This document shows positions 3,151-42,507 of a stretch of 64,000 nucleotides of DNA, piece by piece. Location of the stretch: positions 1-64,000 of the IMG/VR virus record IMGVR_UViG_3300040801_002079. One strand, given 5' to 3'. The position numbers and the translations under genes were made by a program. A model generated the notes under the pieces. It made no database searches. It was not told where the DNA came from and worked only from the letters and a program-made list of their open reading frames with translations. How positions within the stretch are numbered: position 1 is the first letter of the stretch; every line of letters starts with the position of its first letter.

Positions 3151-4970
3151 TATGCTGTCCCTCCAATCACATACCACGTATCTCCACCTTCGCAGAGAAT
3201 GGTTACAGCATCACCTTGCGGGACTGTATTCGCAGTGCTGGCAAGCGTGTCTGAGCCTGCAACGGTAATCGTGACGATACCTGCACCCTTATTGTATAGA
3301 TTCAATGTTTCACCATCAGCAGCAAGTCCATCAGGAATATCATAGGTGCTGGCACTGCCATTGTTAGCTGTAACACATTTAGTCAGATCAGCTTCTGTAA
3401 AACTGTACGTGGTTCCAGTCTGAGCATTTGTTGCAGAAAATCCTGTAGCAAAATCGTTAACATTGACAATCTGTGGCGTACCATCCCAAGAGACTTCCCA
3501 ATTGGTATTAGCACTGTCATACATAATGTCAACAGAGCCTTCGTTTTGATCGATAACAGCCGTTGTATCACTGTCAATCGTTTCAGCGCCATTTGGAGTA
3601 ATGGTAATGGGGTATGTTCCAGCAACATGGCCCACATCATGTATGATAATGTTATCAAGATTGGTTCCAGCCGGGAGTGTGACAGCTACTGGTCCACCTG
3701 AACTATCTACGTAATACTTTTTACCTGCTTCTGCTGTGAAATCAGCCGTTTTGAGTTCCGGGGTAAGCCCGCCGCCACTACTTAAGCTTAGTGAGTAAAG
3801 TGGAACCCACTCAGTAGTGGCTCTTTTCCATAAAACCACACTTTGACCAACATCAAGTGTAATTGCCCCACCGGTTAGGGTGTCTGTGTTTGTATCAATC
3901 GTGGTTGTTCCTGCACCGCGCTGTAAAATCTCAATTCTAGAATCAACAGGGAACGCTACGCTAGAGTTATCAGGTATTGTTACGGCATTGGCACTTACAT
4001 TATCCATTTCAACTACAGCGCCCATATCAGCATATGTTAATGTATATGTTGTTCCGGTTTGCAAGTTTTGATGTGGAAATGGACCAACAAGATTGCCCGT
4101 ACTCACGTAACTGCCATCTTTTTGAACAATGTCTGTATCTACATTGTATTCATAGCTAGCCATATTAGTAAATGTTAATGTGCCACCAACATATACAAAC
4201 GACCTTCCATAAACGTCAATACCGCCATCAGAATTGGATATTGAACATGTTCCGGTTAGCGTCAGGGTTGATCCATCAGAAACTTCGTATACAATCCATC
4301 CACCATTATTGTTATCAACAGCAACAGACACAATATCAATATAAGAATTCTGATAAGCACTTATAAGAGAATCAAATGTGCTGGCAACTGAAGTTACAGA
4401 TGATGAACTCAGTTTGAAATATGAATTGTAAACATATGCTAAGCAGTCAATACCGGTAAAATCACATGATATTAACTGTACGATACTATTATATGCCTCA
4501 AAAGCATAAGGTGCGGTTGTAGCTATGCTGGTGAATGTTATATTTGAAAACCTAACATCCATTCCATCAAATCTTAAAGCATAGTAGTACCCTGCCTCGT
4601 TATCATCAATCTGTATAAATGTCGTTGCTTTGTTGGCACCATTAAACCGTAAATGATTTATGCCTTCCTTTTTCAATCGATACGATGTTGAGTCAGGAAT
4701 TGAGTAAGTTCCAGCAACAACTGTAACATAAATTACCGCATCCTTAAATTCTGTTGTCTGTAAATAATCTATTACCTCTGCAAAAGTGGTATAGTCTCCA
4801 CCTCCACCAGCATCTAGTGTTATACCTACAAACCCAGTAACTTTTTGACTATCGTCGTAAGTTCTTAAATCTTCCGGAGTTAATTTAACACTCGCAGCAC
4901 TTTGTACACCTATAAGCTCTTCTGCTCCAGTTAAGGGTGATGCACTTGGGTATGTTCCTATCTTAGCCAT
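3150..4970 (-). CDS. Fibre/adhesin with pectin-lyase-like beta-helix and repeated C-terminal fibre modules
   Basis: GGDYTTFAEVIDYL...AGTY beta-helix cap; two copies of N-x-QTGTTY(T/S)...D module; FTAEAGKKYYVDSSGGPVAVTLP module. Confidence 0.65.
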   Translation of the reverse strand: MAKIGTYPSASPLTGAEELIGVQSAASVKLTPEDLRTYDDSQKVTGFVGITLDAGGGGDYTTFAEVIDYLQTTEFKDAVIYVTVVAGTYSIPDSTSYRLKKEGINHLRFNGANKATTFIQIDDNEAGYYYALRFDGMDVRFSNITFTSIATTAPYAFEAYNSIVQLISCDFTGIDCLAYVYNSYFKLSSSSVTSVASTFDSLISAYQNSYIDIVSVAVDNNNGGWIVYEVSDGSTLTLTGTCSISNSDGGIDVYGRSFVYVGGTLTFTNMASYEYNVDTDIVQKDGSYVSTGNLVGPFPHQNLQTGTTYTLTYADMGAVVEMDNVSANAVTIPDNSSVAFPVDSRIEILQRGAGTTTIDTNTDTLTGGAITLDVGQSVVLWKRATTEWVPLYSLSLSSGGGLTPELKTADFTAEAGKKYYVDSSGGPVAVTLPAGTNLDNIIIHDVGHVAGTYPITITPNGAETIDSDTTAVIDQNEGSVDIMYDSANTNWEVSWDGTPQIVNVNDFATGFSATNAQTGTTYSFTEADLTKCVTANNGSASTYDIPDGLAADGETLNLYNKGAGIVTITVAGSDTLASTANTVPQGDAVTILCEGGDTWYVIGGTA

Positions 4971-5005
4971 AATTTTTCCTCAAAATATATTTATTAAAGT
5001 CCCGT

Positions 5006-5860
5006 TTATTCCTCTAATATCGGATTACCCGACTCATCTAATATAGTTCCACCAGATTCATCTAAGAATGCTCCACCAACTCCGCCCGATGGTGTTGGGG
5101 TTACCGTATTCGTTGGAGTAACCGTAGGAGTAGCAGTAGCTGTATTAGCTGGTGTAACGGTTGGAGTAATCGTTTGTGTTGGAGTTACTGTATTTGTTGG
5201 AGTTACTGTATTTGTTGGCGTAACGGTTGGAGTAACGGTTTGGGTCGCTCCAATGGATGCCGTAGGAGTAACGGTAGCTGTAGGAGTAACGGTTTGTGTG
5301 GGTGTAACGGTCACAGTTGGAGTTACTGTAGCTGTAACAGACGGGGTTGGTGTAACAGTAGCTGTAACTGTTGGCGTAACAGTAGCTGTAACTGTTGGTG
5401 TAGCTGTGGTCGTAGGCGTAACTGTCGGAGTAACTGTGCTCGTTGGAGTAACCGTAACCGTTGGTGTAACAGTGCTCGTTGGTGTAACAGTGCTCGTTGG
5501 TGTCACCGTTGGAGTAGATGTTAATGTTGGAGTTGGAGTTGGAGATGGGTTAATAACATCGTCACATTCGCAGTTCTGGTTAGTATAAAACAACACATTA
5601 CAAAACCCAGATTGCTCATCAAAGAATTCAATAACAATAGTATCATTATCTTCAATTACAATAGACTCTGGAATCAATAAACTACCAGTATCATCAAACA
5701 CTTGAATGTTAATTGATTCTGTATCATATACATGATTTAATGTCCAAACACTACTCTTCTCCGTAAATAAAAACTGTTCCAATTTTACACAAAGTTTATG
5801 AGACTTACTTATTACATAGCCCCCGGTTTTGGTGTCAACAAATAATTTACCTAGTCTCAT
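5006..5860 (-). CDS. Putative virion protein with long Thr/Pro/Val low-complexity stalk
   Basis: About 150 aa of TPTVT repeats; N-terminal WTLNH...VFD...IVIEF module; acidic C-terminal LDESG repeat. Confidence 0.65.
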   Translation of the reverse strand: MRLGKLFVDTKTGGYVISKSHKLCVKLEQFLFTEKSSVWTLNHVYDTESINIQVFDDTGSLLIPESIVIEDNDTIVIEFFDEQSGFCNVLFYTNQNCECDDVINPSPTPTPTLTSTPTVTPTSTVTPTSTVTPTVTVTPTSTVTPTVTPTTTATPTVTATVTPTVTATVTPTPSVTATVTPTVTVTPTQTVTPTATVTPTASIGATQTVTPTVTPTNTVTPTNTVTPTQTITPTVTPANTATATPTVTPTNTVTPTPSGGVGGAFLDESGGTILDESGNPILEE

Positions 5861-33269: not shown

Positions 33270-34885
33270 ATGGATAGGCTAAATAGACTTTTAGGTATAA
33301 TCATTATATTCTTAGTTGGAATTTATGTTGGACTATGGATATCTCCCCTGAAACATTCAAGCATGTCTGCCGAAGACTATCAGGAAGGATACGAATTATT
33401 AGCTCAATCTAAGGTTGAACTACAGCGGTCCATATTGTATTTTTATATGAACAATTATTGTGAAGCTGGGACATCTAGAGTAATTGATCTTATGTATCAC
33501 GGCACAAAATTTCAAGGGGTTTTTTGTGACAAGGATACTATACTATTATTACAGGATCAGTTCCCTCCCCTGCCGTTTTTTATTTTAGATTTAACTATTG
33601 AGGAGAATGATGACAACACATAGCCCCTTAAAACGAGCAAGCATTATATTCATGATTGTATTTTTTGCAGTATCCGTGATTGTTTTTATTATATGGTCCC
33701 TCTTTGCATATTGGGGATCACGACCCAAACCTGTCACATATGTTATACAGGATGTTAAACCTAATACGGGGCATATGATGGATATATGTGATACCCCAAA
33801 TATCACAGTTTTAGAAAATGCTGTAACTGGACAAATACAATATAAATGTGGTAATTTAGGAAAAACAAACGAAGTTATTACATTCTATGAATAAATAGTA
33901 CCGAGGATTTTACCAATGTTTGATGACTATCTTAAAACTCAAAACCGCATATTTATGATTTTCAATATCATTATTTCAACATCTGCTACAACTCTTGCGG
34001 CATTTTTAATACTTGAGGGTCACATGTTGCTGGCATTTTTAGAATTTTGTATAGCCATTGCAGTCTGTTCCGGGCTTATAGGTTTAGCCCATCGAAACAA
34101 AGACTTCATGAAAAAGTGGAATGCCATGAACAGCGTTGAATATGGATCATACGATCTTGATGATGCGGAAGATATGAGCAATCGGGGCATTGGTAACCTC
34201 TCCTTCGACTTTAAAAAGCCCTCTGAGTAAAGCACATGTCTAAAATAAAAGGGTCTACTTATGAAATCCTTTTCAGAAGTGGGGCTACACTAATACTTGA
34301 AAATGTTAAGGATGTAAATTTGGAATTCGAAAATAGGCGGATTTCAAAATTTAATGTCTCTGGCACACCAACAGGGGATGCCCTAAAATTTATTAACATT
34401 GGCGAAATTGTAGCCGTAAATAAAAAAGGACGGAAGCGCGGAATATGGAAACGGTAACCGAGCATAAGCAACTAAAGAAAGATGAGTTTATTAAAATCGT
34501 TCAGATAACGGGTCCAGTTGTTGATCGGCTATCTGTTACTGGACAAGTTGTTAATGTCAATAAAGAATTTTTTGAAGTTCAAACATTCGATGGAATCATG
34601 GGACTTTCTTTAACCAATGATGATTATAAATTTGAAATAAGCAAATTAAAAAGAAAACCATCGGGATGGGATAAATTTATGAAGGACCCATCTAAATTCC
34701 ACGAAACTGAAAAGGACGCTGCCCCAGTGGTTAATAAACGTGTTCAGGTATTTAAGATTGTAAAGAATAATCCGCGTAAAAAACTAGATTCTCTATTAAA
34801 GCAGGCACAGGAAGAAGTTGGTGGTGATGCATCCGTTTTGAAAAAATATGTAGAAATGGGTATTATTAAGTTTAGAGGGGCTTAA
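33270..34885 (+). CDS. Five small hypothetical ORFs (33270, 33598, 33916, 34236, 34445), first three with hydrophobic segments
   Basis: Contiguous same-strand ORFs. Confidence 0.55.
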
Positions 34886-35570
34886 CCCATTCCAATAATG
34901 GAACTTGATTTATTTTAACTTCAGCGGCTATACATGCTTCGCCACCATCATTAAATAATTTTTCAAAATCTCTAAATTTTATATAGGCATGACCACGATC
35001 ACCCCAATTTAATCCCCATGAATTCTTTATTCTGAAATATTCACGATTAACATCGACTCCATTGAGAATATAGGCATGACCTCCCATTCTTCTACCCTTA
35101 GGGCGAATAAGTCCCTTATTATTAGGCTCTTGCATTTTATCATACCATTTGGTGCCCACAACCATTGGCCCAATTGTCAGTAATGTCATTATAATTTCAT
35201 CGATATTAAATGCCCATCGATACTCTGTTATAACACCAGTATCCTTTAGAACCCTAGCTCCAGCCCGTACACTGGTTCCAGAATAGTTTTCTCCGGGCCA
35301 TTGATCAACCAGTTGGCATGTCTTGTAAAACTCTCTAGGATCAAACAGGGGACGTTTTCTATCGGGGATAGAGTCCTGTATCACTGGACCGTCTTCAATC
35401 CAGTGTGACCACGAGTATGCAACACAATGGGATGTTGTACCCTGATCGCCCCACCATCCATTTGCCCACCAGAACTTTTCAGTTATTCGTGGCGCACTCA
35501 TTAAGAATGATGATATACCATAATTTAAATCTCTGTGATCCTGTACTTCTAGTCTACCAAAACTTCTCAT
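34872..35570 (-). CDS. Papain-like (C1) cysteine peptidase
   Basis: DQGTTSHCVAYS (oxyanion Q, catalytic C), GGHAY (H), KNSWG (N). Confidence 0.85.
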   Translation of the reverse strand: MRSFGRLEVQDHRDLNYGISSFLMSAPRITEKFWWANGWWGDQGTTSHCVAYSWSHWIEDGPVIQDSIPDRKRPLFDPREFYKTCQLVDQWPGENYSGTSVRAGARVLKDTGVITEYRWAFNIDEIIMTLLTIGPMVVGTKWYDKMQEPNNKGLIRPKGRRMGGHAYILNGVDVNREYFRIKNSWGLNWGDRGHAYIKFRDFEKLFNDGGEACIAAEVKINQVPLLEWVKPL

Positions 35571-38711: not shown

Positions 38712-38738
38712 AAAAAAGCCCCGATTTCTCGGGGCTTT
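38712..38738 (-). terminator. Intrinsic terminator of the TROVE/vWA gene
   Basis: AAAGCCCCGA/TCGGGGCTTT stem with U tract on - strand. Confidence 0.8.
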
Positions 38739-38748
38739 CGTTTGCCCA

Positions 38749-40221
38749 TCAAAGGGTTACAGACTTATATCTTTCGGAATTTAGAACCTCAAGCATTAGC
38801 TCGTATGGTCCAATAAATTCTCCAGTCATAAGTGACTGCAAGATTGATGGTGAGAATCCAGAAACGTTCTGGAATCCCCGCTCGTCCATGCTCATTGGGA
38901 ACTGCACATTACGTGCATTAACATTCCAGAATACAAGCTTGGGCATTTCGTATCCAGCACGGCTGAACTTGTCAGCAATAGTCTGGAATAGAGTGCTATT
39001 GCTACGACTTGTGGCACCATCAAATTCCATATCGGAAATGATGTAAAGCTTGTCAAGCATTTCACTCTTTGGAACATTGTTCTTAATTGCTGCATCTAAT
39101 ACAAGATTAAACACGGCTTCAATGTTCGTATTCATGTCCCAACTTGCTCTCCAGAGATTGTTAACCTTCTCCACAATGTTGGCACCCTTAAGCTCCTGTA
39201 GCTTAGGACGATTGCTAAAGGTAATGAAGTGATCCTTGTATGGACCCTTAGCACGTTCAGCTAAGTAAATACCCAATCCAAGGGCTACATCTCGTGGCAA
39301 TCCATCACCCATACCCATTGATCCGGATGTATCAACAACCGCGATTGAGTTTTCAGCTTCACCCGTAAAATCAGGCAAGTTGTTCCACATTGCTTCGGCA
39401 ACATTGGTATCAATATTTCCACCGCGCATGATCTTACCAACAATTTCATGAGGGTAAAGAACGGACACATTAATCTTGGCTTCACCAGTATTAACCGCGT
39501 TGATGAAGTCAGTGTAACGTGCACGGTCATGCTTAGCGAACGCATTTCGATACTTCATCATTGCGTTAGATGGAACGCGAGAATACTCAATCTCATCCCA
39601 CTGATTCGCAGAAGTCTTACGTTCGACAACATCAAGGTGCTTACGCAACTTAGACAATGCCTTGCGATATGAACGAGAATCCATACCCAATGCTTCACGG
39701 GTCTTACGTGCAAGACGCTTGGTTTCACGGCTTGACGCATTTTCAGACTTCAACCACTTTGCAAGCAATGAGATATTGTCATCTTCAAAGAAGCTGAACA
39801 TATCCTTGTTGAACTGCTTAGCAAGAGCATCATATGCGTCACGCTCAACTTCAGTTCCGTCAAGCGCATAAACATCGTCCCAACGTCCATATTCTGGAAT
39901 ATTAGAAATGTTCTTTCGCGCTGTGTCTTCTGCTAATTCCGCTAACAGCTTGTACTGGTTACGGAACGCCTCGCGCTGGCCCTGTCCTCCACGAACATCA
40001 CGGAAATAGAACATAGCCTTAAGAGCTAGTTCGGGATTTTCAGCCCATGCTCGTAAGAACATGTCCTGCTGCTTTTCAGGGCTTAACATGCGAATAGCAC
40101 CACCCTGAGAAAAGAAATCTAAAACGGCTGAATTAGTAGTTGCCTTAGCAACCGCGCCATTTTCAGTTAATGCGTAATTATCAACACCCTTAAGTGCGTT
40201 TAAGAATCGTGTAGTCATCAT
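38749..40221 (-). CDS. DUF2828-type TROVE-like + vWA protein (Ro60-related architecture)
   Basis: TENGA...LDFF, RDVRGGQGQR, YGRWDD, LAKWL, YSRVPSNAM helical region; MIDAS VDTSGSM, NTN, ISDMEFD, FWNV, SGFS. Confidence 0.85.
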   Translation of the reverse strand: MMTTRFLNALKGVDNYALTENGAVAKATTNSAVLDFFSQGGAIRMLSPEKQQDMFLRAWAENPELALKAMFYFRDVRGGQGQREAFRNQYKLLAELAEDTARKNISNIPEYGRWDDVYALDGTEVERDAYDALAKQFNKDMFSFFEDDNISLLAKWLKSENASSRETKRLARKTREALGMDSRSYRKALSKLRKHLDVVERKTSANQWDEIEYSRVPSNAMMKYRNAFAKHDRARYTDFINAVNTGEAKINVSVLYPHEIVGKIMRGGNIDTNVAEAMWNNLPDFTGEAENSIAVVDTSGSMGMGDGLPRDVALGLGIYLAERAKGPYKDHFITFSNRPKLQELKGANIVEKVNNLWRASWDMNTNIEAVFNLVLDAAIKNNVPKSEMLDKLYIISDMEFDGATSRSNSTLFQTIADKFSRAGYEMPKLVFWNVNARNVQFPMSMDERGFQNVSGFSPSILQSLMTGEFIGPYELMLEVLNSERYKSVTL

Positions 40222-40248
40222 TTTTCTCCTGTGTTAAGTTTCTACAAC

Positions 40249-40434
40249 AAGACGGCTTTTTTGCTTTTCACCATGCAGTATATTTGCTGTTACCGTCTTT
40301 AATATTACTAGGTACTTTACTAGCTTCTGTGTTTGAGACAGATTGTAAGTAGTATTGCTGTTAGTACCTAAATCTAACTAGATGCCTTTCTTCTCTTCAT
40401 TGACGTAGAATGTTATAATTGCTGTAAGCATCTA
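40249..40434 (-). ncRNA. Array of three hairpin RNA units with invariant ACAGCAA (40379-40434, 40309-40370, 40249-40299)
   Basis: Different 7-8 bp terminal stems, each self-complementary, with ACAGCAA at the same position in all three; no ORF. Confidence 0.7.
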
Positions 40435-40582
40435 AAAACTAACTTTCTTCTTTAATAAATGATGTGCATTTTGTGCTCACCGTGTAATTGATCAAGTGCC
40501 TAATTTGTCAATTTTATAAAACTATTTAGTAATCTTGCAAAAAAGTGTAAAAATTATTTTTTTACGATCTTTATGGGGAGCC

Positions 40583-40610
40583 ATTATACACATAAAACAG
40601 TGTTTGTCAA
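40583..40610 (-). promoter_or_regulatory. Consensus sigma70 promoter facing the hairpin array and TROVE gene
   Basis: TTGACA-N16-TATAAT-GGCTCCCC with A-tract upstream. Confidence 0.8.
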
Positions 40611-40645
40611 CCCCTAATTTTAATTTTTTTTTTGAATAAATTTAT

Positions 40646-41105: not shown

Positions 41106-42254
41106 TTAATGAAACATTAGGTATGTTCCTAAAACCCCCCTATGGTTCGCAGAATTATCCCCTTCTTTGGGTCTAACTATGACATTCCATTTGGGTTTAT
41201 CCCCTAGATTTTTTAGATTTTTCATCATTTCATTATATGTTAAGATTGTGTTAATATCTATTCCATAATGATCCGATAAGCGTTGTTTGAAATCCTGAAG
41301 GGCTTGCTTATTCTTAAACATCATTTTCCCTTCTTCATCCCTAACCATTTTGCGACCATCTTTTTTAATTAAATCATTAAATAAAGATTTTGGTACGACC
41401 ACGCTATGCTTTTCGTCTTCGAAGTTAATTCGCTTTTCTTCTTTATTGAGTGCACCTTTACTAAAGTTCATAATAAAATTATCTGGGGCTTTAGCCTTAA
41501 ATGCATCTGAAACTTTTGTATAAGCATAGAAGTCAACATTTGGGAATTTCTTTGCAACACGAAATGCCATATCTAAATACTGTGGACTAAAAAAATCACC
41601 GTCATCATGCCATCTAATAGCGATCCTCCCCGGCTCACCATTATCAAGGCTAGATATTTCACTAGAAAGTTTATTTTCAAATCCCTCGGGATCATTCAAT
41701 AAAAAGTTAAGAACTTGTGCGTGATTTTTGCTAGAGTCTGGGTATTGTATATACCCTCCTTTCATCGCATAACAATATAGTTTACATTCTCCTGCGCCGG
41801 GGCATGTATTAACAATAACAAATTCCCCTGTATCCTCATCTACTGCTAATCCCCTCAGAGCGGGTAGCCCTATATTATAAAATATCTGTTCTGAGCCATC
41901 ACTGTGTTTCATTTTAGAATTTTGTTTAAGAATATTATCTGGGCGAGTTGTTATTTGTTTTTTCAAATCAGCGGTATCATAGGTATTACCAGACTCGTCT
42001 TTAATTTTTATATTGCTGCCATGAACGTAAGGATTCTTAAATTTATCTCTTTTTTCTTTGCTTTTTGTCTTAATTCGATTTAAATAATCCTGCATTTCAT
42101 CTTCAGGGAAAGGGGTTGTTTGTGCTCCTAACCCTAATGGGGCCTCAGTAAGATTGTTTCTCAGAAAATCATCTAGGCTCATTACCCTTAGACCATTTTT
42201 ACGCTTTTTCTTGCCTTTTTTTATTTCATTTATTAAAATATCATTAATTTTCAT
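41106..42254 (-). CDS. GP88-family protein (radical-SAM-like Cys cluster)
   Basis: TCPGAGECKLYCYA, IRWHDDGDF, FYAYTK; start trimmed to MKINDILINE downstream of AATAAATA. Confidence 0.75.
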   Translation of the reverse strand: MKINDILINEIKKGKKKRKNGLRVMSLDDFLRNNLTEAPLGLGAQTTPFPEDEMQDYLNRIKTKSKEKRDKFKNPYVHGSNIKIKDESGNTYDTADLKKQITTRPDNILKQNSKMKHSDGSEQIFYNIGLPALRGLAVDEDTGEFVIVNTCPGAGECKLYCYAMKGGYIQYPDSSKNHAQVLNFLLNDPEGFENKLSSEISSLDNGEPGRIAIRWHDDGDFFSPQYLDMAFRVAKKFPNVDFYAYTKVSDAFKAKAPDNFIMNFSKGALNKEEKRINFEDEKHSVVVPKSLFNDLIKKDGRKMVRDEEGKMMFKNKQALQDFKQRLSDHYGIDINTILTYNEMMKNLKNLGDKPKWNVIVRPKEGDNSANHRGVLGTYLMFH

Positions 42255-42507
42255 AGTTTTTCCCCATGTCTTAATATATTTATTGATTTCAATAAACACT
42301 GATGATAAGATTATCGCAATATGGGAGTAAATTATAATGAGCAAACAATTTTTATTAGAATTTGATTATGAGGGGTGGTGTCAAGGTCCCGAGAAAATGC
42401 ATACAATGGTTCTCGTTTATGCTACTTCATTTGATGATGCAGTATTGAAATTGCGAAAAGAGTATGATATGGTTAAGAATGTGAAAAATAGGACTATAGA
42501 ATAAAAT

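What the first reader, a model, noticed from the sequence alone, without database searches (positions are those of the whole stretch)
40272..40412. Variable interiors of the array resemble anticodon stem-loops (possible tRNA decoys)
Seen: unit B contains TCTGT-CTCAAAC-ACAGA, a 5-bp stem with 7-nt loop CU-CAA-AC (canonical anticodon-arm geometry; CAA = Leu). Unit A contains CATT-CTACGTC-AATG (4-bp stem, CU-ACG = Arg, but U at position 37). Unit C has CT-GCA-TG (Cys) with only a poor, shifted stem. All three triplets are anticodons used in bacteria. Established: anticodon nucleases such as PrrC and RloC act against phages, and bacterial YrlA Y RNAs mimic tRNA. Inference: decoys or repair substrates presented by the Ro-like protein. 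With n=3 and only one fully canonical loop, chance is possible.
Basis: partly seen in the sequence, partly recalled or inferred. Interest (0 to 1): 0.7.

Follow-up and report, generated by a model that had tools for sequence, protein, structure and literature searches.

The report
Phage Ro-like RNAs mimicking anticodon arms
Just upstream of a jumbo phage's Ro60-like gene sit three small structured RNAs from a widespread, apparently undescribed family whose variable middles very often copy tRNA anticodon arms, mostly Lys and Asn, which suggests a phage RNA-protein particle that engages enzymes acting on tRNA.

Summary
On the minus strand, 40436-40247 holds three tandem 55-66-nt units. They lie between a sigma-70 promoter and the start codon of a DUF2828/DUF7788 protein whose AlphaFold model matches Ro60 end to end. 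Each unit has a covarying 7-9-bp clamp helix, an invariant single-stranded ACAGCAA just after the 5' arm, an invariant G after the 3' arm, and a variable interior.

Only unit B is a canonical anticodon-arm mimic (5 bp, loop CU-CAA-AC). Unit A is a weak version and unit C is not one.

Across about 200 distinct homologous units beside DUF2828 genes, 7-nt loops are the only enriched hairpin class. Stems of 5 bp or more with CU-NNN-AA loops occur in 27/132 units (0.4 expected). An independent sample gives 16/68 (0.12 expected). Many different stems carry the same loop, and Lys UUU and Asn GUU dominate. Longer relatives carry whole tRNA bodies or the YrlA tRNA-like core.

I read these as Y-RNA-like partners of a Ro paralogue that display tRNA parts, probably for counter-defence; that function is untested. 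The clamp and motif also match Dictyostelium Class I RNAs.

The parts
40583..40610 (-). Sigma-70-type promoter (TTGACA, 16 nt, TATAAT; 12 of 12 matches) upstream of the array
   Evidence: Close relatives L107 and L109 have TTGACA-type promoters directly in front of their arrays (read by eye).
40377..40436 (-). Unit A. Clamp TTAGATGC/GCATCTAG, ACAGCAA at 40425-40419, 33-nt interior with a weak 4-bp hairpin and 7-nt loop (40412-40398, loop CU-ACG-UC).
   Evidence: CM R1 hit of 39.4 bits, E 1.5e-4. Fold. Sequence.
40307..40372 (-). Unit B. Clamp TTAGGTACT/AGTACCTAG, ACAGCAA at 40361-40355, 38-nt interior.
   Evidence: CM R1 hit of 49.2 bits, E 1.5e-6. The MFE and centroid folds contain both the clamp and the inner hairpin.
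40326..40342 (-). Anticodon-stem-loop mimic inside unit B: 5-bp stem TCTGT/ACAGA and 7-nt loop CU-CAA-AC.
   Evidence: The same hairpin geometry is kept in close relatives with other triplets: L107 has loop CU-CGA-AA and L109 has CU-UAU-AA.
40247..40301 (-). Unit C. Clamp AAGACGGT/GCCGTCTT, ACAGCAA at 40290-40284, invariant G at 40248, 27-nt interior of the UGGYGAAAA class. It is not an anticodon-arm mimic.
   Evidence: CM R1 hit of 46.4 bits, E 5.5e-6. Interior classes. Fold.
40226..40230 (-). Ribosome-binding site AGGAG, 18 nt after unit C and 4 nt before the ATG.
   Evidence: Sequence.
38749..40221 (-). Gene for a 490-aa DUF2828 + DUF7788 protein (phrog_850 'RNA-binding protein') with a Ro60-like fold: TROVE-like helical ring plus a vWA domain.
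   Evidence: Pfam. PHROGs. AF2 model built with an alignment, pLDDT 88. The top Foldseek hits are Ro60/TROVE structures: E 2e-8 to 1e-5, TM 0.52-0.62 for most of them, over the full length.
38714..38739 (-). Intrinsic terminator after the gene (11-bp stem followed by a T run).

Best explanation
The region is a tandem array of three small structured RNAs. They are transcribed with, or just ahead of, the gene for a Ro60-like phage protein (DUF2828/DUF7788).

Each unit has two parts. The constant part is a 7-9-bp terminal clamp helix, a single-stranded ACAGCAA directly after the 5' arm, and a G after the 3' arm. I infer that this is the docking site for the Ro-like protein, playing the role that the Ro-binding stem plays in Y RNAs. 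The variable part is a displayed module copied from tRNA. In this family it ranges from a whole tRNA body, or the permuted T/D-arm core of bacterial YrlA, down to a bare anticodon stem-loop (5-bp stem, loop C32-U33-NNN-A37-A38).

In this window, unit B is such a bare anticodon arm (CAA). Unit A is a degenerate one. Unit C carries a different short motif.

I infer that the resulting RNA-protein particle presents tRNA look-alikes to enzymes that recognise anticodon arms. The most likely targets are host tRNA-cleaving immune nucleases, with the RNA acting as a competitive decoy or trap and so as a counter-defence.

Shown: the anatomy, covariation, gene linkage, protein fold and loop statistics.
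Inferred: protein binding, processing into separate RNAs, and the decoy function.
For: 1. Real RNA family.
- The clamp pairs in 99% of cells, with compensatory changes at all 7 pairs. Register-shift controls give 30-48% paired.
- ACAGCAA and the 3' G are nearly invariant across 132 distinct units.

2. Linkage to the gene.
- CM R1 gave 168 hits in 678 kb of DUF2828 loci. 167 were on the gene's strand and none inside the gene. The median distance was 143 nt upstream, and others lay just downstream.
- In this phage's own 317-kb genome, only these three units are significant.
- An RNA-first scan of IMG/VR found more than 113 stretches (about 0.2 expected, my estimate). 51 of the 83 units in the 80 loci returned had DUF2828 in the stored flank, all on the same strand, at a median of 85 nt. 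8 of 9 further contigs encode the gene elsewhere.

3. The protein is Ro60-like by structure.

4. Anticodon-arm mimicry.
- Only 7-nt loops are enriched among hairpins of 5 bp or more: 65 against 36.4 +/- 5.9.
- Loop composition is C32 50%, U33 69%, A37 60% and A38 59%, against backgrounds of 15, 33, 40 and 40%.
- CU-NNN-AA loops occur in 27/132 units against 0.4 expected, and in 16/68 new units against 0.12.
- There are 37 distinct hairpins. Position 34 is G or U in 36 of 37. UUU occurs 11 times and GUU 9 times, binomial P 2e-7 and 2e-9.
- One loop sequence occurs with up to five different stems within the first sample.

5. tRNA-like relatives.
- Unit interiors hit the tRNA model without the acceptor stem.
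- Units hit the YrlA core at E 7.6e-7 and 1.4e-6, but not YrlA's Ro-binding stem.

6. Context. The units are interleaved with tRNA genes in Felix O1 and a Bacillus phage. An RtcB ligase gene lies about 1.3 kb downstream of the DUF2828 gene in a Listeria phage.

7. Expression. Metatranscriptome contigs from the source sample cover 38850-40397, including one contig that spans the start codon and units C and B. Flanks that are covered by DNA runs have no RNA contigs.

8. Function hints.
- Bas63 gp130 (Ro60-like, upstream of a tRNA block) counters the Ppl defence.
- PARIS AriB cleaves tRNA Lys UUU, Thr UGU and Asn GUU and recognises U36-A-A-U39. 22 of the 37 mimics carry that motif.
Against: - No experiment shows that the protein binds these RNAs, that the units are cut out of the transcript, or that any nuclease touches them.
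- Only about a quarter to a third of units have a clear anticodon-arm mimic. Many interiors are unclassified, including the window's units A and C.
- The window's own triplet is Leu CAA, and those of its close relatives are Ser CGA and Ile UAU. None of these is Lys or Asn.
- The one defence known to be countered by a family member (Ppl) was proposed to degrade DNA, not tRNA.
- The array sits in the mRNA leader 18 nt from the ribosome-binding site, so autoregulation is possible.
- The seeds were chosen for having a stem, and CM alignments are fitted to the model. Units from related phages are not independent, although counting distinct stems reduces this problem.
- RNA coverage is thin (depth 2-5) and comes from assembled contigs.
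Confidence: 0.55

Rival explanations
1. Adaptor rather than decoy. As bacterial Y RNA tethers Rsr to PNPase, the tRNA-like module recruits a tRNA-processing, tRNA-modifying or RNA-repair enzyme (RtcB, Pnkp, RNase, CCA-adding or modification enzymes) to the Ro-like ring. This would serve quality control or repair of phage and host tRNAs during infection.
For: - The protein has the Ro60 fold.
- Units match the YrlA core.
- In D. radiodurans, Y RNA tethers Ro60 to PNPase (abstract of PMC4201824). YrlA RNAs carry tRNA-type modifications and are substrates of enzymes that recognise tRNA (PMC4201824).
- The units sit inside tRNA gene blocks, and an RtcB gene lies about 1.3 kb downstream of the DUF2828 gene in a Listeria phage.
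- The jumbo-phage survey places TROVE proteins with RNA-repair systems (PMC7824862).
Against: - A bare anticodon arm is a poor handle for most tRNA-processing enzymes, which read the acceptor/T-arm elbow.
- The strong bias towards Lys UUU and Asn GUU arms fits particular nuclease targets better than general repair.
- No repair gene lies next to the array in this window.
Confidence: 0.22
2. Cis-regulatory leader. The units are operator sites in the 5' UTR through which the DUF2828 protein represses its own translation. The variable interiors are spacers with no function of their own.
For: - The array lies between the promoter and the ribosome-binding site, and unit C ends 18 nt before AGGAG.
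- An RNA contig joins units C and B to the coding region.
- Half of the upstream units in other phages end within 150 nt of the start codon.
Against: - 23 of 146 units lie downstream of the gene. Others are kilobases away inside tRNA blocks or elsewhere on the contig.
- Arrays of 2-7 copies, and selection for anticodon-arm geometry with covarying inner stems, are not needed for an operator.
- The two roles could coexist.
Confidence: 0.1
3. Decayed tRNA genes or processing spacers of phage tRNA operons. On this view the hairpins have no function of their own, and the resemblance to anticodon arms is inherited debris or chance.
For: - The units are interleaved with tRNA genes in several phages.
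- Some interiors are near-complete tRNA bodies.
- With n = 3 in the window, only one loop is canonical.
Against: - Debris would not keep an invariant ACAGCAA, a covarying clamp and covarying 5-bp inner stems with constant loops across phages of Bacillota, Proteobacteria, Campylobacterota, Actinomycetota and Cyanobacteria.
- Dinucleotide shuffles give 0.1-0.4 CU-NNN-AA hairpins where 16-27 are seen.
- The strict same-strand linkage is to one protein family.
Confidence: 0.05

Closest known systems
Bacterial and phage Ro60 (Rsr)-Y RNA particles, especially YrlA (Rfam RF02553; Chen et al. 2014, PMC4201824)
   Same: - Small RNAs encoded next to, and on the strand of, a Ro60-fold protein gene.
[quoted passage not shown]
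- Some relatives' units match the YrlA T-arm/hairpin/D-arm core.
   Different: - The protein is DUF2828/DUF7788, not Pfam TROVE, with 13-16% identity to Ro60.
- The stem lacks the GNCGAAN0-1G Rsr-binding motif. It carries ACAGCAA plus a 3' G instead.
- No unit reaches the YrlA gathering score, and the window's units give no hit at all.
- Most units are half the size of YrlA and display only an anticodon arm, which YrlA lacks.
- The units come in tandem arrays.
Dictyostelid Class I RNAs (Rfam RF01414; Kjellin et al. 2021, PMC7919456)
   Same: - Length of 42-65 nt, with a short terminal stem.
- A conserved CCUUACAGCAA directly after the 5' arm; the phage units have [U/A][U/A]ACAGCAA in the same place.
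- A variable interior of about 30-40 nt and a 3' UG tail.
- The Rfam model aligns end to end with a phage unit and was the best Rfam hit in two separate arrays.
   Different: - Scores of 19-23 bits are below the 41.5-bit gathering score.
- Class I RNAs are eukaryotic genes with a DUSE promoter and are reported as unique to Dictyostelia.
- Their known direct binder is an RRM protein (Rnp1A).
- By eye I saw no anticodon-arm hairpins in the Class I sequences shown. This was not tested.
- I could not check whether Dictyostelia have a DUF2828 protein.
Phage tRNA-based escape from tRNA-cleaving defences (T5 tRNAs against PARIS AriB; T4 against PrrC)
   Same: Phage-encoded RNAs carry the anticodon arms of exactly the tRNAs that these nucleases attack: Lys UUU, Asn GUU and Thr UGU.
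   Different: - Those are complete, chargeable tRNAs that replace cleaved host tRNAs, and they carry cleavage-resistant substitutions.
- The units here cannot be aminoacylated or decode.
- Many keep the cleavable U36-A-A-U39 context.
Bas63 gp130 / Felix O1 ORF42 (Ro60-like counter-defence protein; preprint 10.1101/2024.10.10.617714)
   Same: - Felix O1 ORF42 belongs to the window protein's family by tblastn (34% identity, E 2e-75).
- The preprint describes Bas63 gp130 as a Ro60-like protein directly upstream of a tRNA block, the same arrangement as in Felix O1. I did not align gp130 itself.
- Felix O1 has four of these units in the gaps of its tRNA block.
   Different: - The preprint guessed that some annotated tRNAs might be the Y RNAs. 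The units found here are the unannotated spacers between tRNAs.
- The defence that gp130 counters (Ppl) is not known to target tRNA.

Membership tests
Y RNA / YrlA (RF02553) | Encoded within a few kb of, and on the same strand as, a Ro60-family protein gene | tested here: met
   The array ends 26 nt before the start codon of a protein with the Ro60 fold. Family-wide, 167 of 168 hits are on the gene's strand.
Y RNA / YrlA (RF02553) | Terminal stem carrying the Ro/Rsr-binding motif (GNCGAAN0-1G in bacteria; PMC4201824) | tested here: not met
   A terminal stem is present, but the motif is absent. ACAGCAA plus a 3' G is conserved instead. YrlA model positions 1-22 and 89-114 are not matched, even in relatives.
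Y RNA / YrlA (RF02553) | tRNA-like domain with T arm and D arm; score at or above the Rfam gathering threshold (69 bits) | tested here: not met
   The window units give no YrlA hit even at E up to 10. Relatives reach 45 and 38 bits on the core only.
Y RNA / YrlA (RF02553) | Physical association with the Ro protein | not testable with these tools
   Complex prediction does not fold protein-RNA pairs. This needs RIP, CLIP or EMSA.
Dictyostelid Class I RNA (RF01414) | Short terminal stem, an 11-nt CCUUACAGCAA motif next to the 5' arm, and a length of 42-65 nt | tested here: met
   9-10 of the 11 motif positions, the stem, the length of 55-66 nt and the 3' UG all agree.
Dictyostelid Class I RNA (RF01414) | Rfam gathering score of 41.5 bits; dictyostelid genome with a DUSE promoter | tested here: not met
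   Scores are 19 bits in the window and 23 bits in L006. The source is a phage genome with a sigma-70 promoter. This is a resemblance, not membership.
tRNA (RF00005) | Cloverleaf with acceptor stem, D, anticodon and T arms | tested here: not met
   Neither Rfam nor ARAGORN finds a tRNA in 40222-40645. The interiors of 27-38 nt are too short.
tRNA anticodon stem-loop geometry | 5-bp stem, 7-nt loop, pyrimidine 32, U33, purine 37 | tested here: met
   Unit B meets every criterion. Unit A has 4 bp and U37, so it does not. Unit C has no such stem. In the family there are 49 distinct hairpins that meet them.
Ro60 / TROVE protein family (the neighbouring gene) | TROVE helical ring plus C-terminal vWA/MIDAS domain | tested here: met
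   Foldseek gives full-length matches to Ro60 structures (9kop, 9l5y, 1yvp, 2i91) at E 2e-8 to 5e-7, TM 0.52-0.62. Pfam TROVE itself is not hit; the protein is classed as DUF2828 + DUF7788.

The most novel reading that the evidence does not exclude
The clamp + UUACAGCAA + 3' UG module is a docking signal for DUF2828-type Ro paralogues that is shared between phages and eukaryotes. On this reading, Dictyostelium Class I RNAs are the Y-RNA-like partners of a DUF2828-family protein, and DUF2828 proteins of plants and other eukaryotes have similar undiscovered RNA partners. Class I RNAs were discovered in 2004, are abundant and affect development, and their mechanism is unknown. The candidate protein is the uncharacterised DDB_G0281243 that was pulled down with DdR-21. 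The phage arrays would then be the first case in which the protein partner of this module can be read from gene linkage.
Probability: 0.25. Interest if true: 0.9.

Novelty: new variant of a known kind. Interest (0 to 1): 0.8.

Why it matters
DUF2828 'RNA-binding proteins' are encoded by hundreds of sequenced phages, 710 records in one collection alone. These include Felix O1-like, Listeria, Staphylococcus, Enterococcus, Campylobacter, Vibrio and mycobacterial phages, some of them members of groups I know to be used in biocontrol. Their RNA partners had not been described in anything I could search.

This work defines that partner family: its docking module, and a modular cargo that copies tRNA parts. 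It shows that the smallest cargo is a bare anticodon arm, most often that of tRNA-Lys(UUU) or tRNA-Asn(GUU), which are favoured targets of bacterial tRNA-cleaving immunity.

That turns a vague annotation into a directly testable counter-defence mechanism. It extends the Ro/Y-RNA principle to a second protein family. It also offers a concrete lead on the partner protein of Dictyostelium Class I RNAs.

Tried and rejected
- A single-sequence AlphaFold run of the protein gave pLDDT 39 and was discarded.
I rebuilt it as A5.
- Complex prediction with the protein and unit B RNA was not folded and gave no verdict. It is not evidence either way.
- An HMM search of PDB sequences found no Ro60. Only the fold search did.
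- The whole 354-nt leader has no unusual folding energy (z -0.55). The signal lies in the individual units (z about -2) and in covariation.
- MAFFT misaligned one seed (L021a), which I dropped.
- I could not establish whether Dictyostelium has a DUF2828 protein. The Swiss-Prot fold search listed no Dictyostelium entry. AFDB clusters came without organism names. The ESM Atlas and the protein search returned only phage or bacterial relatives. Avesson et al. 2011 is not held. The supplements do not mention DDB_G0281243.
- Full-text literature searches found no description of this RNA family.
- The closest relative, P0002 (83% identity), had no retrievable DNA.
- I considered the units as riboswitches, attenuators or terminators. 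There is no Rfam match, no terminator between the array and the gene, and the copy number and position vary.
- I considered whether the clamp is an acceptor-stem analogue. That fits units holding a tRNA body in natural order, but not the permuted YrlA-like ones, so I leave it open.

Full report
**What is in the window**

The window is the first 64 kb of a 316.8-kb jumbo phage genome with direct terminal repeats. The same sequence is held by DNA and RNA runs of a microbial-mat metagenome sample.

The finding lies on the minus strand in a 424-nt gap with no ORF of 50 aa or more. A perfect sigma-70 promoter sits at 40610-40583. Three tandem units follow at 40436-40377 (A), 40372-40307 (B) and 40301-40247 (C). 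Then come AGGAG (40230-40226) and the ATG (40221) of a 490-aa gene that ends at an intrinsic terminator.

Each unit has four elements:
- a 5' arm that pairs with a 3' arm, with different sequences in each unit (AGATGC/GCATCT, AGGTAC/GTACCT, AGACGG/CCGTCT);
- the string [T]TAACAGCAA directly after the 5' arm;
- a variable interior of 27-38 nt;
- a G after the 3' arm.

**Checking the observation**

- Unit B (40342-40326) is a textbook anticodon-arm shape. It has a 5-bp stem and the loop CU-CAA-AC, and it appears in both the MFE and the centroid fold.
- Unit A's CATT/AATG hairpin has 4 bp and U at position 37. The predicted fold does not use it.
- Unit C's CTGCATG has no stem.

Dinucleotide shuffles of the three interiors produce a hairpin like B's in 0.9% of trials. 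That is suggestive, but the test is post hoc.

**The neighbouring protein**

Pfam calls it DUF2828 + DUF7788. PHROGs calls it 'RNA-binding protein'.

An AlphaFold model built on 30 homologues reached pLDDT 88. Its best matches, over the full length, are Ro60/TROVE structures from a Thermus phage, Xenopus, human and Deinococcus. The scores are E 2e-8 to 1e-5 and TM 0.52-0.62 for most, at 12-16% identity. So 'Ro-like' is right as to fold, but the protein is a distinct family.

tblastn finds this family in 710 phage records. They include Felix O1-like, Listeria, Staphylococcus, Enterococcus, Bacillus, Campylobacter, Vibrio, Aeromonas, cyanobacterial and mycobacterial phages.

**The units are a conserved RNA family tied to that gene**

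A scripted scan of 19 homologous loci found the same 'stem + C.GCAA' units beside the gene in almost every lineage.

I built a covariance model from 16 short units and searched the window plus 98 DUF2828 loci, 678 kb on both strands.
- It gave 168 hits at E up to 1, and 167 of them lie on the gene's strand.
- None lies inside the gene.
- Most are within a few hundred nt upstream (median 143 nt), and 23 are just downstream.
- 75 of the 99 sources searched have one to five units among the best 150 hits.

Across 132 distinct units the clamp is paired in 99.2% of cells, with compensatory changes at all seven pairs. Shifted registers give 29-48%. ACAGCAA and the G after the 3' arm are nearly invariant.

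In this phage's own genome only the three units score significantly.

I then tested the link from the RNA side. An exact pattern for the commonest clamp (22 specified bases) found more than 113 stretches in IMG/VR, where I estimate about 0.2 by chance.
- Of the 83 units in the 80 loci returned, 51 had DUF2828 in the stored flank. All 51 were on the same strand, at a median distance of 85 nt.
- Of nine further contigs that could be searched, eight encode the gene elsewhere. The ninth is an incomplete genome.

Rfam 15 has no family for these units, and six full-text literature searches found no description of them.

**What the variable interiors are**

Among all hairpins of 5 bp or more in the 132 interiors, only 7-nt loops are enriched. 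There are 65 against 36.4 +/- 5.9 in shuffles, and loops of 3-6 and 8-11 nt are at expectation.

After T-loops are removed, those 7-nt loops have this composition:

| Loop position | Base and share | Background |
|---|---|---|
| 32 | C 50% | 15% |
| 33 | U 69% | 33% |
| 37 | A 60% | 40% |
| 38 | A 59% | 40% |

The enrichment of specific loop patterns, always with stems of 5 bp or more:

| Sample | Loop pattern | Observed | Expected from shuffles |
|---|---|---|---|
| 132 units from the CM search | CU-NNN-AA | 27 | 0.4 (max 3 in 200) |
| 132 units from the CM search | YU-NNN-R-N | 36 | 3.3 |
| 68 new interiors from the RNA-first sample | CU-NNN-AA | 16 | 0.12 |

The RNA-first sample is independent, because it was chosen without regard to the interior.

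Pooled, there are 37 distinct CU-NNN-AA hairpins.
- The same loop sits on many different stems. CUGUUAA has five within the first sample alone, which amounts to covariation of the inner helix.
- Position 34 is G or U in 36 of 37.
- The triplets are UUU x11, GUU x9, GCU x3, UGU, UCC, GCA and UGA x2 each, and single cases of others.
- UUU and GUU are far above composition (P 2e-7 and 2e-9).
- 22 of the 37 carry U36-A-A-U39.

The lineage of unit B keeps the geometry while the triplet changes. The window has CAA, relative L107 (68% protein identity) has CGA with a compensating U.G pair in the stem, and relative L109 has UAU.

Longer units carry more of a tRNA.
- Some hold a tRNA body in natural order without the acceptor stem. 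They hit the tRNA model at positions 4-67 or 6-65.
- Others hold the permuted T-arm/hairpin/D-arm core of YrlA. They match at E 7.6e-7 and 1.4e-6 over model positions 23-88, without YrlA's own Ro-binding stem.

About 58% of interiors remain unclassified. A second small class, UGGYGAAAA, includes the window's unit C.

**Expression**

Two metatranscriptomes from the source sample contain contigs over 38850-40397. One of them runs from inside the gene across the start codon through units C and B. DNA runs from the same sample cover the whole 3 kb, but no RNA contig covers 40421-41300 or 38300-38804. This fits transcription of the array together with the gene. Depth is low, however, and contigs cannot show processing.

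**How it most likely works**

The shown facts fit the Ro/Y-RNA logic. A ring-shaped Ro-fold protein is paired with small RNAs that combine a constant docking stem with a variable tRNA-like module.

I infer that the clamp, ACAGCAA and 3' G form the docking site of the DUF2828 protein. It differs from the Rsr site because the protein family differs. I also infer that the particle displays tRNA parts to proteins that read them.

The commonest cargo is the anticodon arm of tRNA-Lys(UUU), followed by Asn(GUU). This is notable for three reasons.
- PrrC attacks tRNA-Lys (PMC1484252, abstract).
- PARIS AriB attacks Lys UUU, Thr UGU and Asn GUU and reads U36-A-A-U39 (PMC12409363).
- A Felixounavirus Ro60-like protein, Bas63 gp130, was found genetically to counter a defence system, Ppl. 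Its authors guessed that unidentified Y RNAs sit in the adjacent tRNA block (preprint 10.1101/2024.10.10.617714).

In Felix O1 I find four such units in the unannotated gaps of that tRNA block.

So I favour a counter-defence particle that traps or diverts tRNA-directed nucleases. An adaptor role for tRNA repair or processing is the main rival, and autoregulation of the gene is a possible additional role.

My rough confidences:

| Claim | Confidence |
|---|---|
| Real RNA family linked to DUF2828 | 0.95 |
| Clamp and motif are the protein's docking site | 0.75 |
| Anticodon-arm mimicry is selected for in the family | 0.85 |
| Unit B is such a mimic | 0.8 |
| Decoy against tRNA nucleases specifically | 0.3 |

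**Comparison with known systems**

The units work like Y RNAs, but they fail the membership tests for YrlA: there is no Rsr-binding motif, the window units have no T/D domain, and scores fall below threshold. They are not tRNAs.

The closest sequence-level resemblance is unexpected. It is to Dictyostelium Class I RNAs, and covers these features:
- the same size;
- a terminal stem;
- the motif CCUUACAGCAA at the same place;
- a variable interior;
- a 3' UG.

The Rfam Class I model was the top, sub-threshold hit in the window array (19 bits, E 0.96). It was top again in an unrelated phage array, where it aligned end to end (23 bits).

Class I RNAs are reported as unique to Dictyostelia, and their mechanism is unknown. 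One pull-down protein, DDB_G0281243, has no known function. I could not determine whether it, or any dictyostelid protein, is a DUF2828 member, so this stays a lead.

**Verdict**

The interiors of this array belong to a family in which anticodon-arm mimicry is a dominant, selected theme, although only unit B shows it cleanly here.

The larger result is the family itself. It is an apparently undescribed Y-RNA-like partner of a widespread phage Ro paralogue, and its cargo is modular and copied from tRNA. I rate it a new variant of a known kind, and of high interest.

**Caveats**
- The seeds were selected for having stems.
- CM alignments lean towards the model.
- The CM calibration was shortened, so its E-values are rough.
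- Related phages are not independent samples.
- Every functional step is inferred.

Noticed in passing
window 40247-40436 (-); L006:2059-2122: Dictyostelium Class I RNA (RF01414) shares the terminal stem, the UUACAGCAA motif next to the 5' arm, the size and the 3' UG with these phage units. It is the best, sub-threshold Rfam hit in two unrelated arrays.
   Followed up: partly
L013 (Salmonella phage Felix O1): 4207-4283, 4375-4441, 4830-4905, 4917-5060: Four unannotated clamp + ACAGCAA units lie in the gaps between the annotated tRNA genes, downstream of ORF42 (the DUF2828 gene). The last one carries a T arm and a D arm.
   Followed up: partly
L005:1091-1536: A full-length GOLLD RNA (199 bits, above its gathering score) lies about 1 kb upstream of a DUF2828 gene and its units. 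tRNA genes also lie elsewhere in the locus (18-89, 266-338).
   Followed up: no
window 40261-40274 (-), unit C; also L107:1296-1348, L026:2329-2383, L029:35-101, L016:2004-2065: A second recurrent interior motif, UGGYGAAAA (sometimes within CAAAUGGUGA), marks a class of units that are not anticodon-arm mimics. Its meaning is unknown.
   Followed up: partly
window 40343-40354 (-), unit B; L006, L007, L014, L016, L058 units: A linker motif, UACUUACA or UUACUAC, recurs right after ACAGCAA(U) in a subset of units.
   Followed up: no
window 41106-42344 (-): A GP88-family protein (PF17338) lies on the same strand near the DUF2828 gene. The closest relative's contig (P0002) has the same pair of genes in the opposite order, which suggests a linkage.
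   Followed up: no
window 40397 (RNA run X4, contig 21): A metatranscriptome contig matches 40254-40397 and then continues for 27 nt of unrelated sequence. It may be a chimeric assembly or a joined RNA end inside unit A.
   Followed up: no
L115:373-424 (-): One exact match to the unit pattern lies in a 15.6-kb contig labelled as a giant-virus MAG. No DUF2828 was found in the stored 11.3 kb, and the record could not be searched further.
   Followed up: partly
L014 (Listeria phage LMTA-34) 5356-6503; L016 and L019 tRNA blocks: DUF2828 loci often sit beside tRNA arrays. In the Listeria phage an RtcB-type 'tRNA splicing ligase' gene lies about 1.3 kb downstream of the DUF2828 gene.
   Followed up: no
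window 34872-35570 (-): A 232-aa ORF gives a weak match to papain-family cysteine protease (Peptidase_C1, E 3.8e-6).
   Followed up: no
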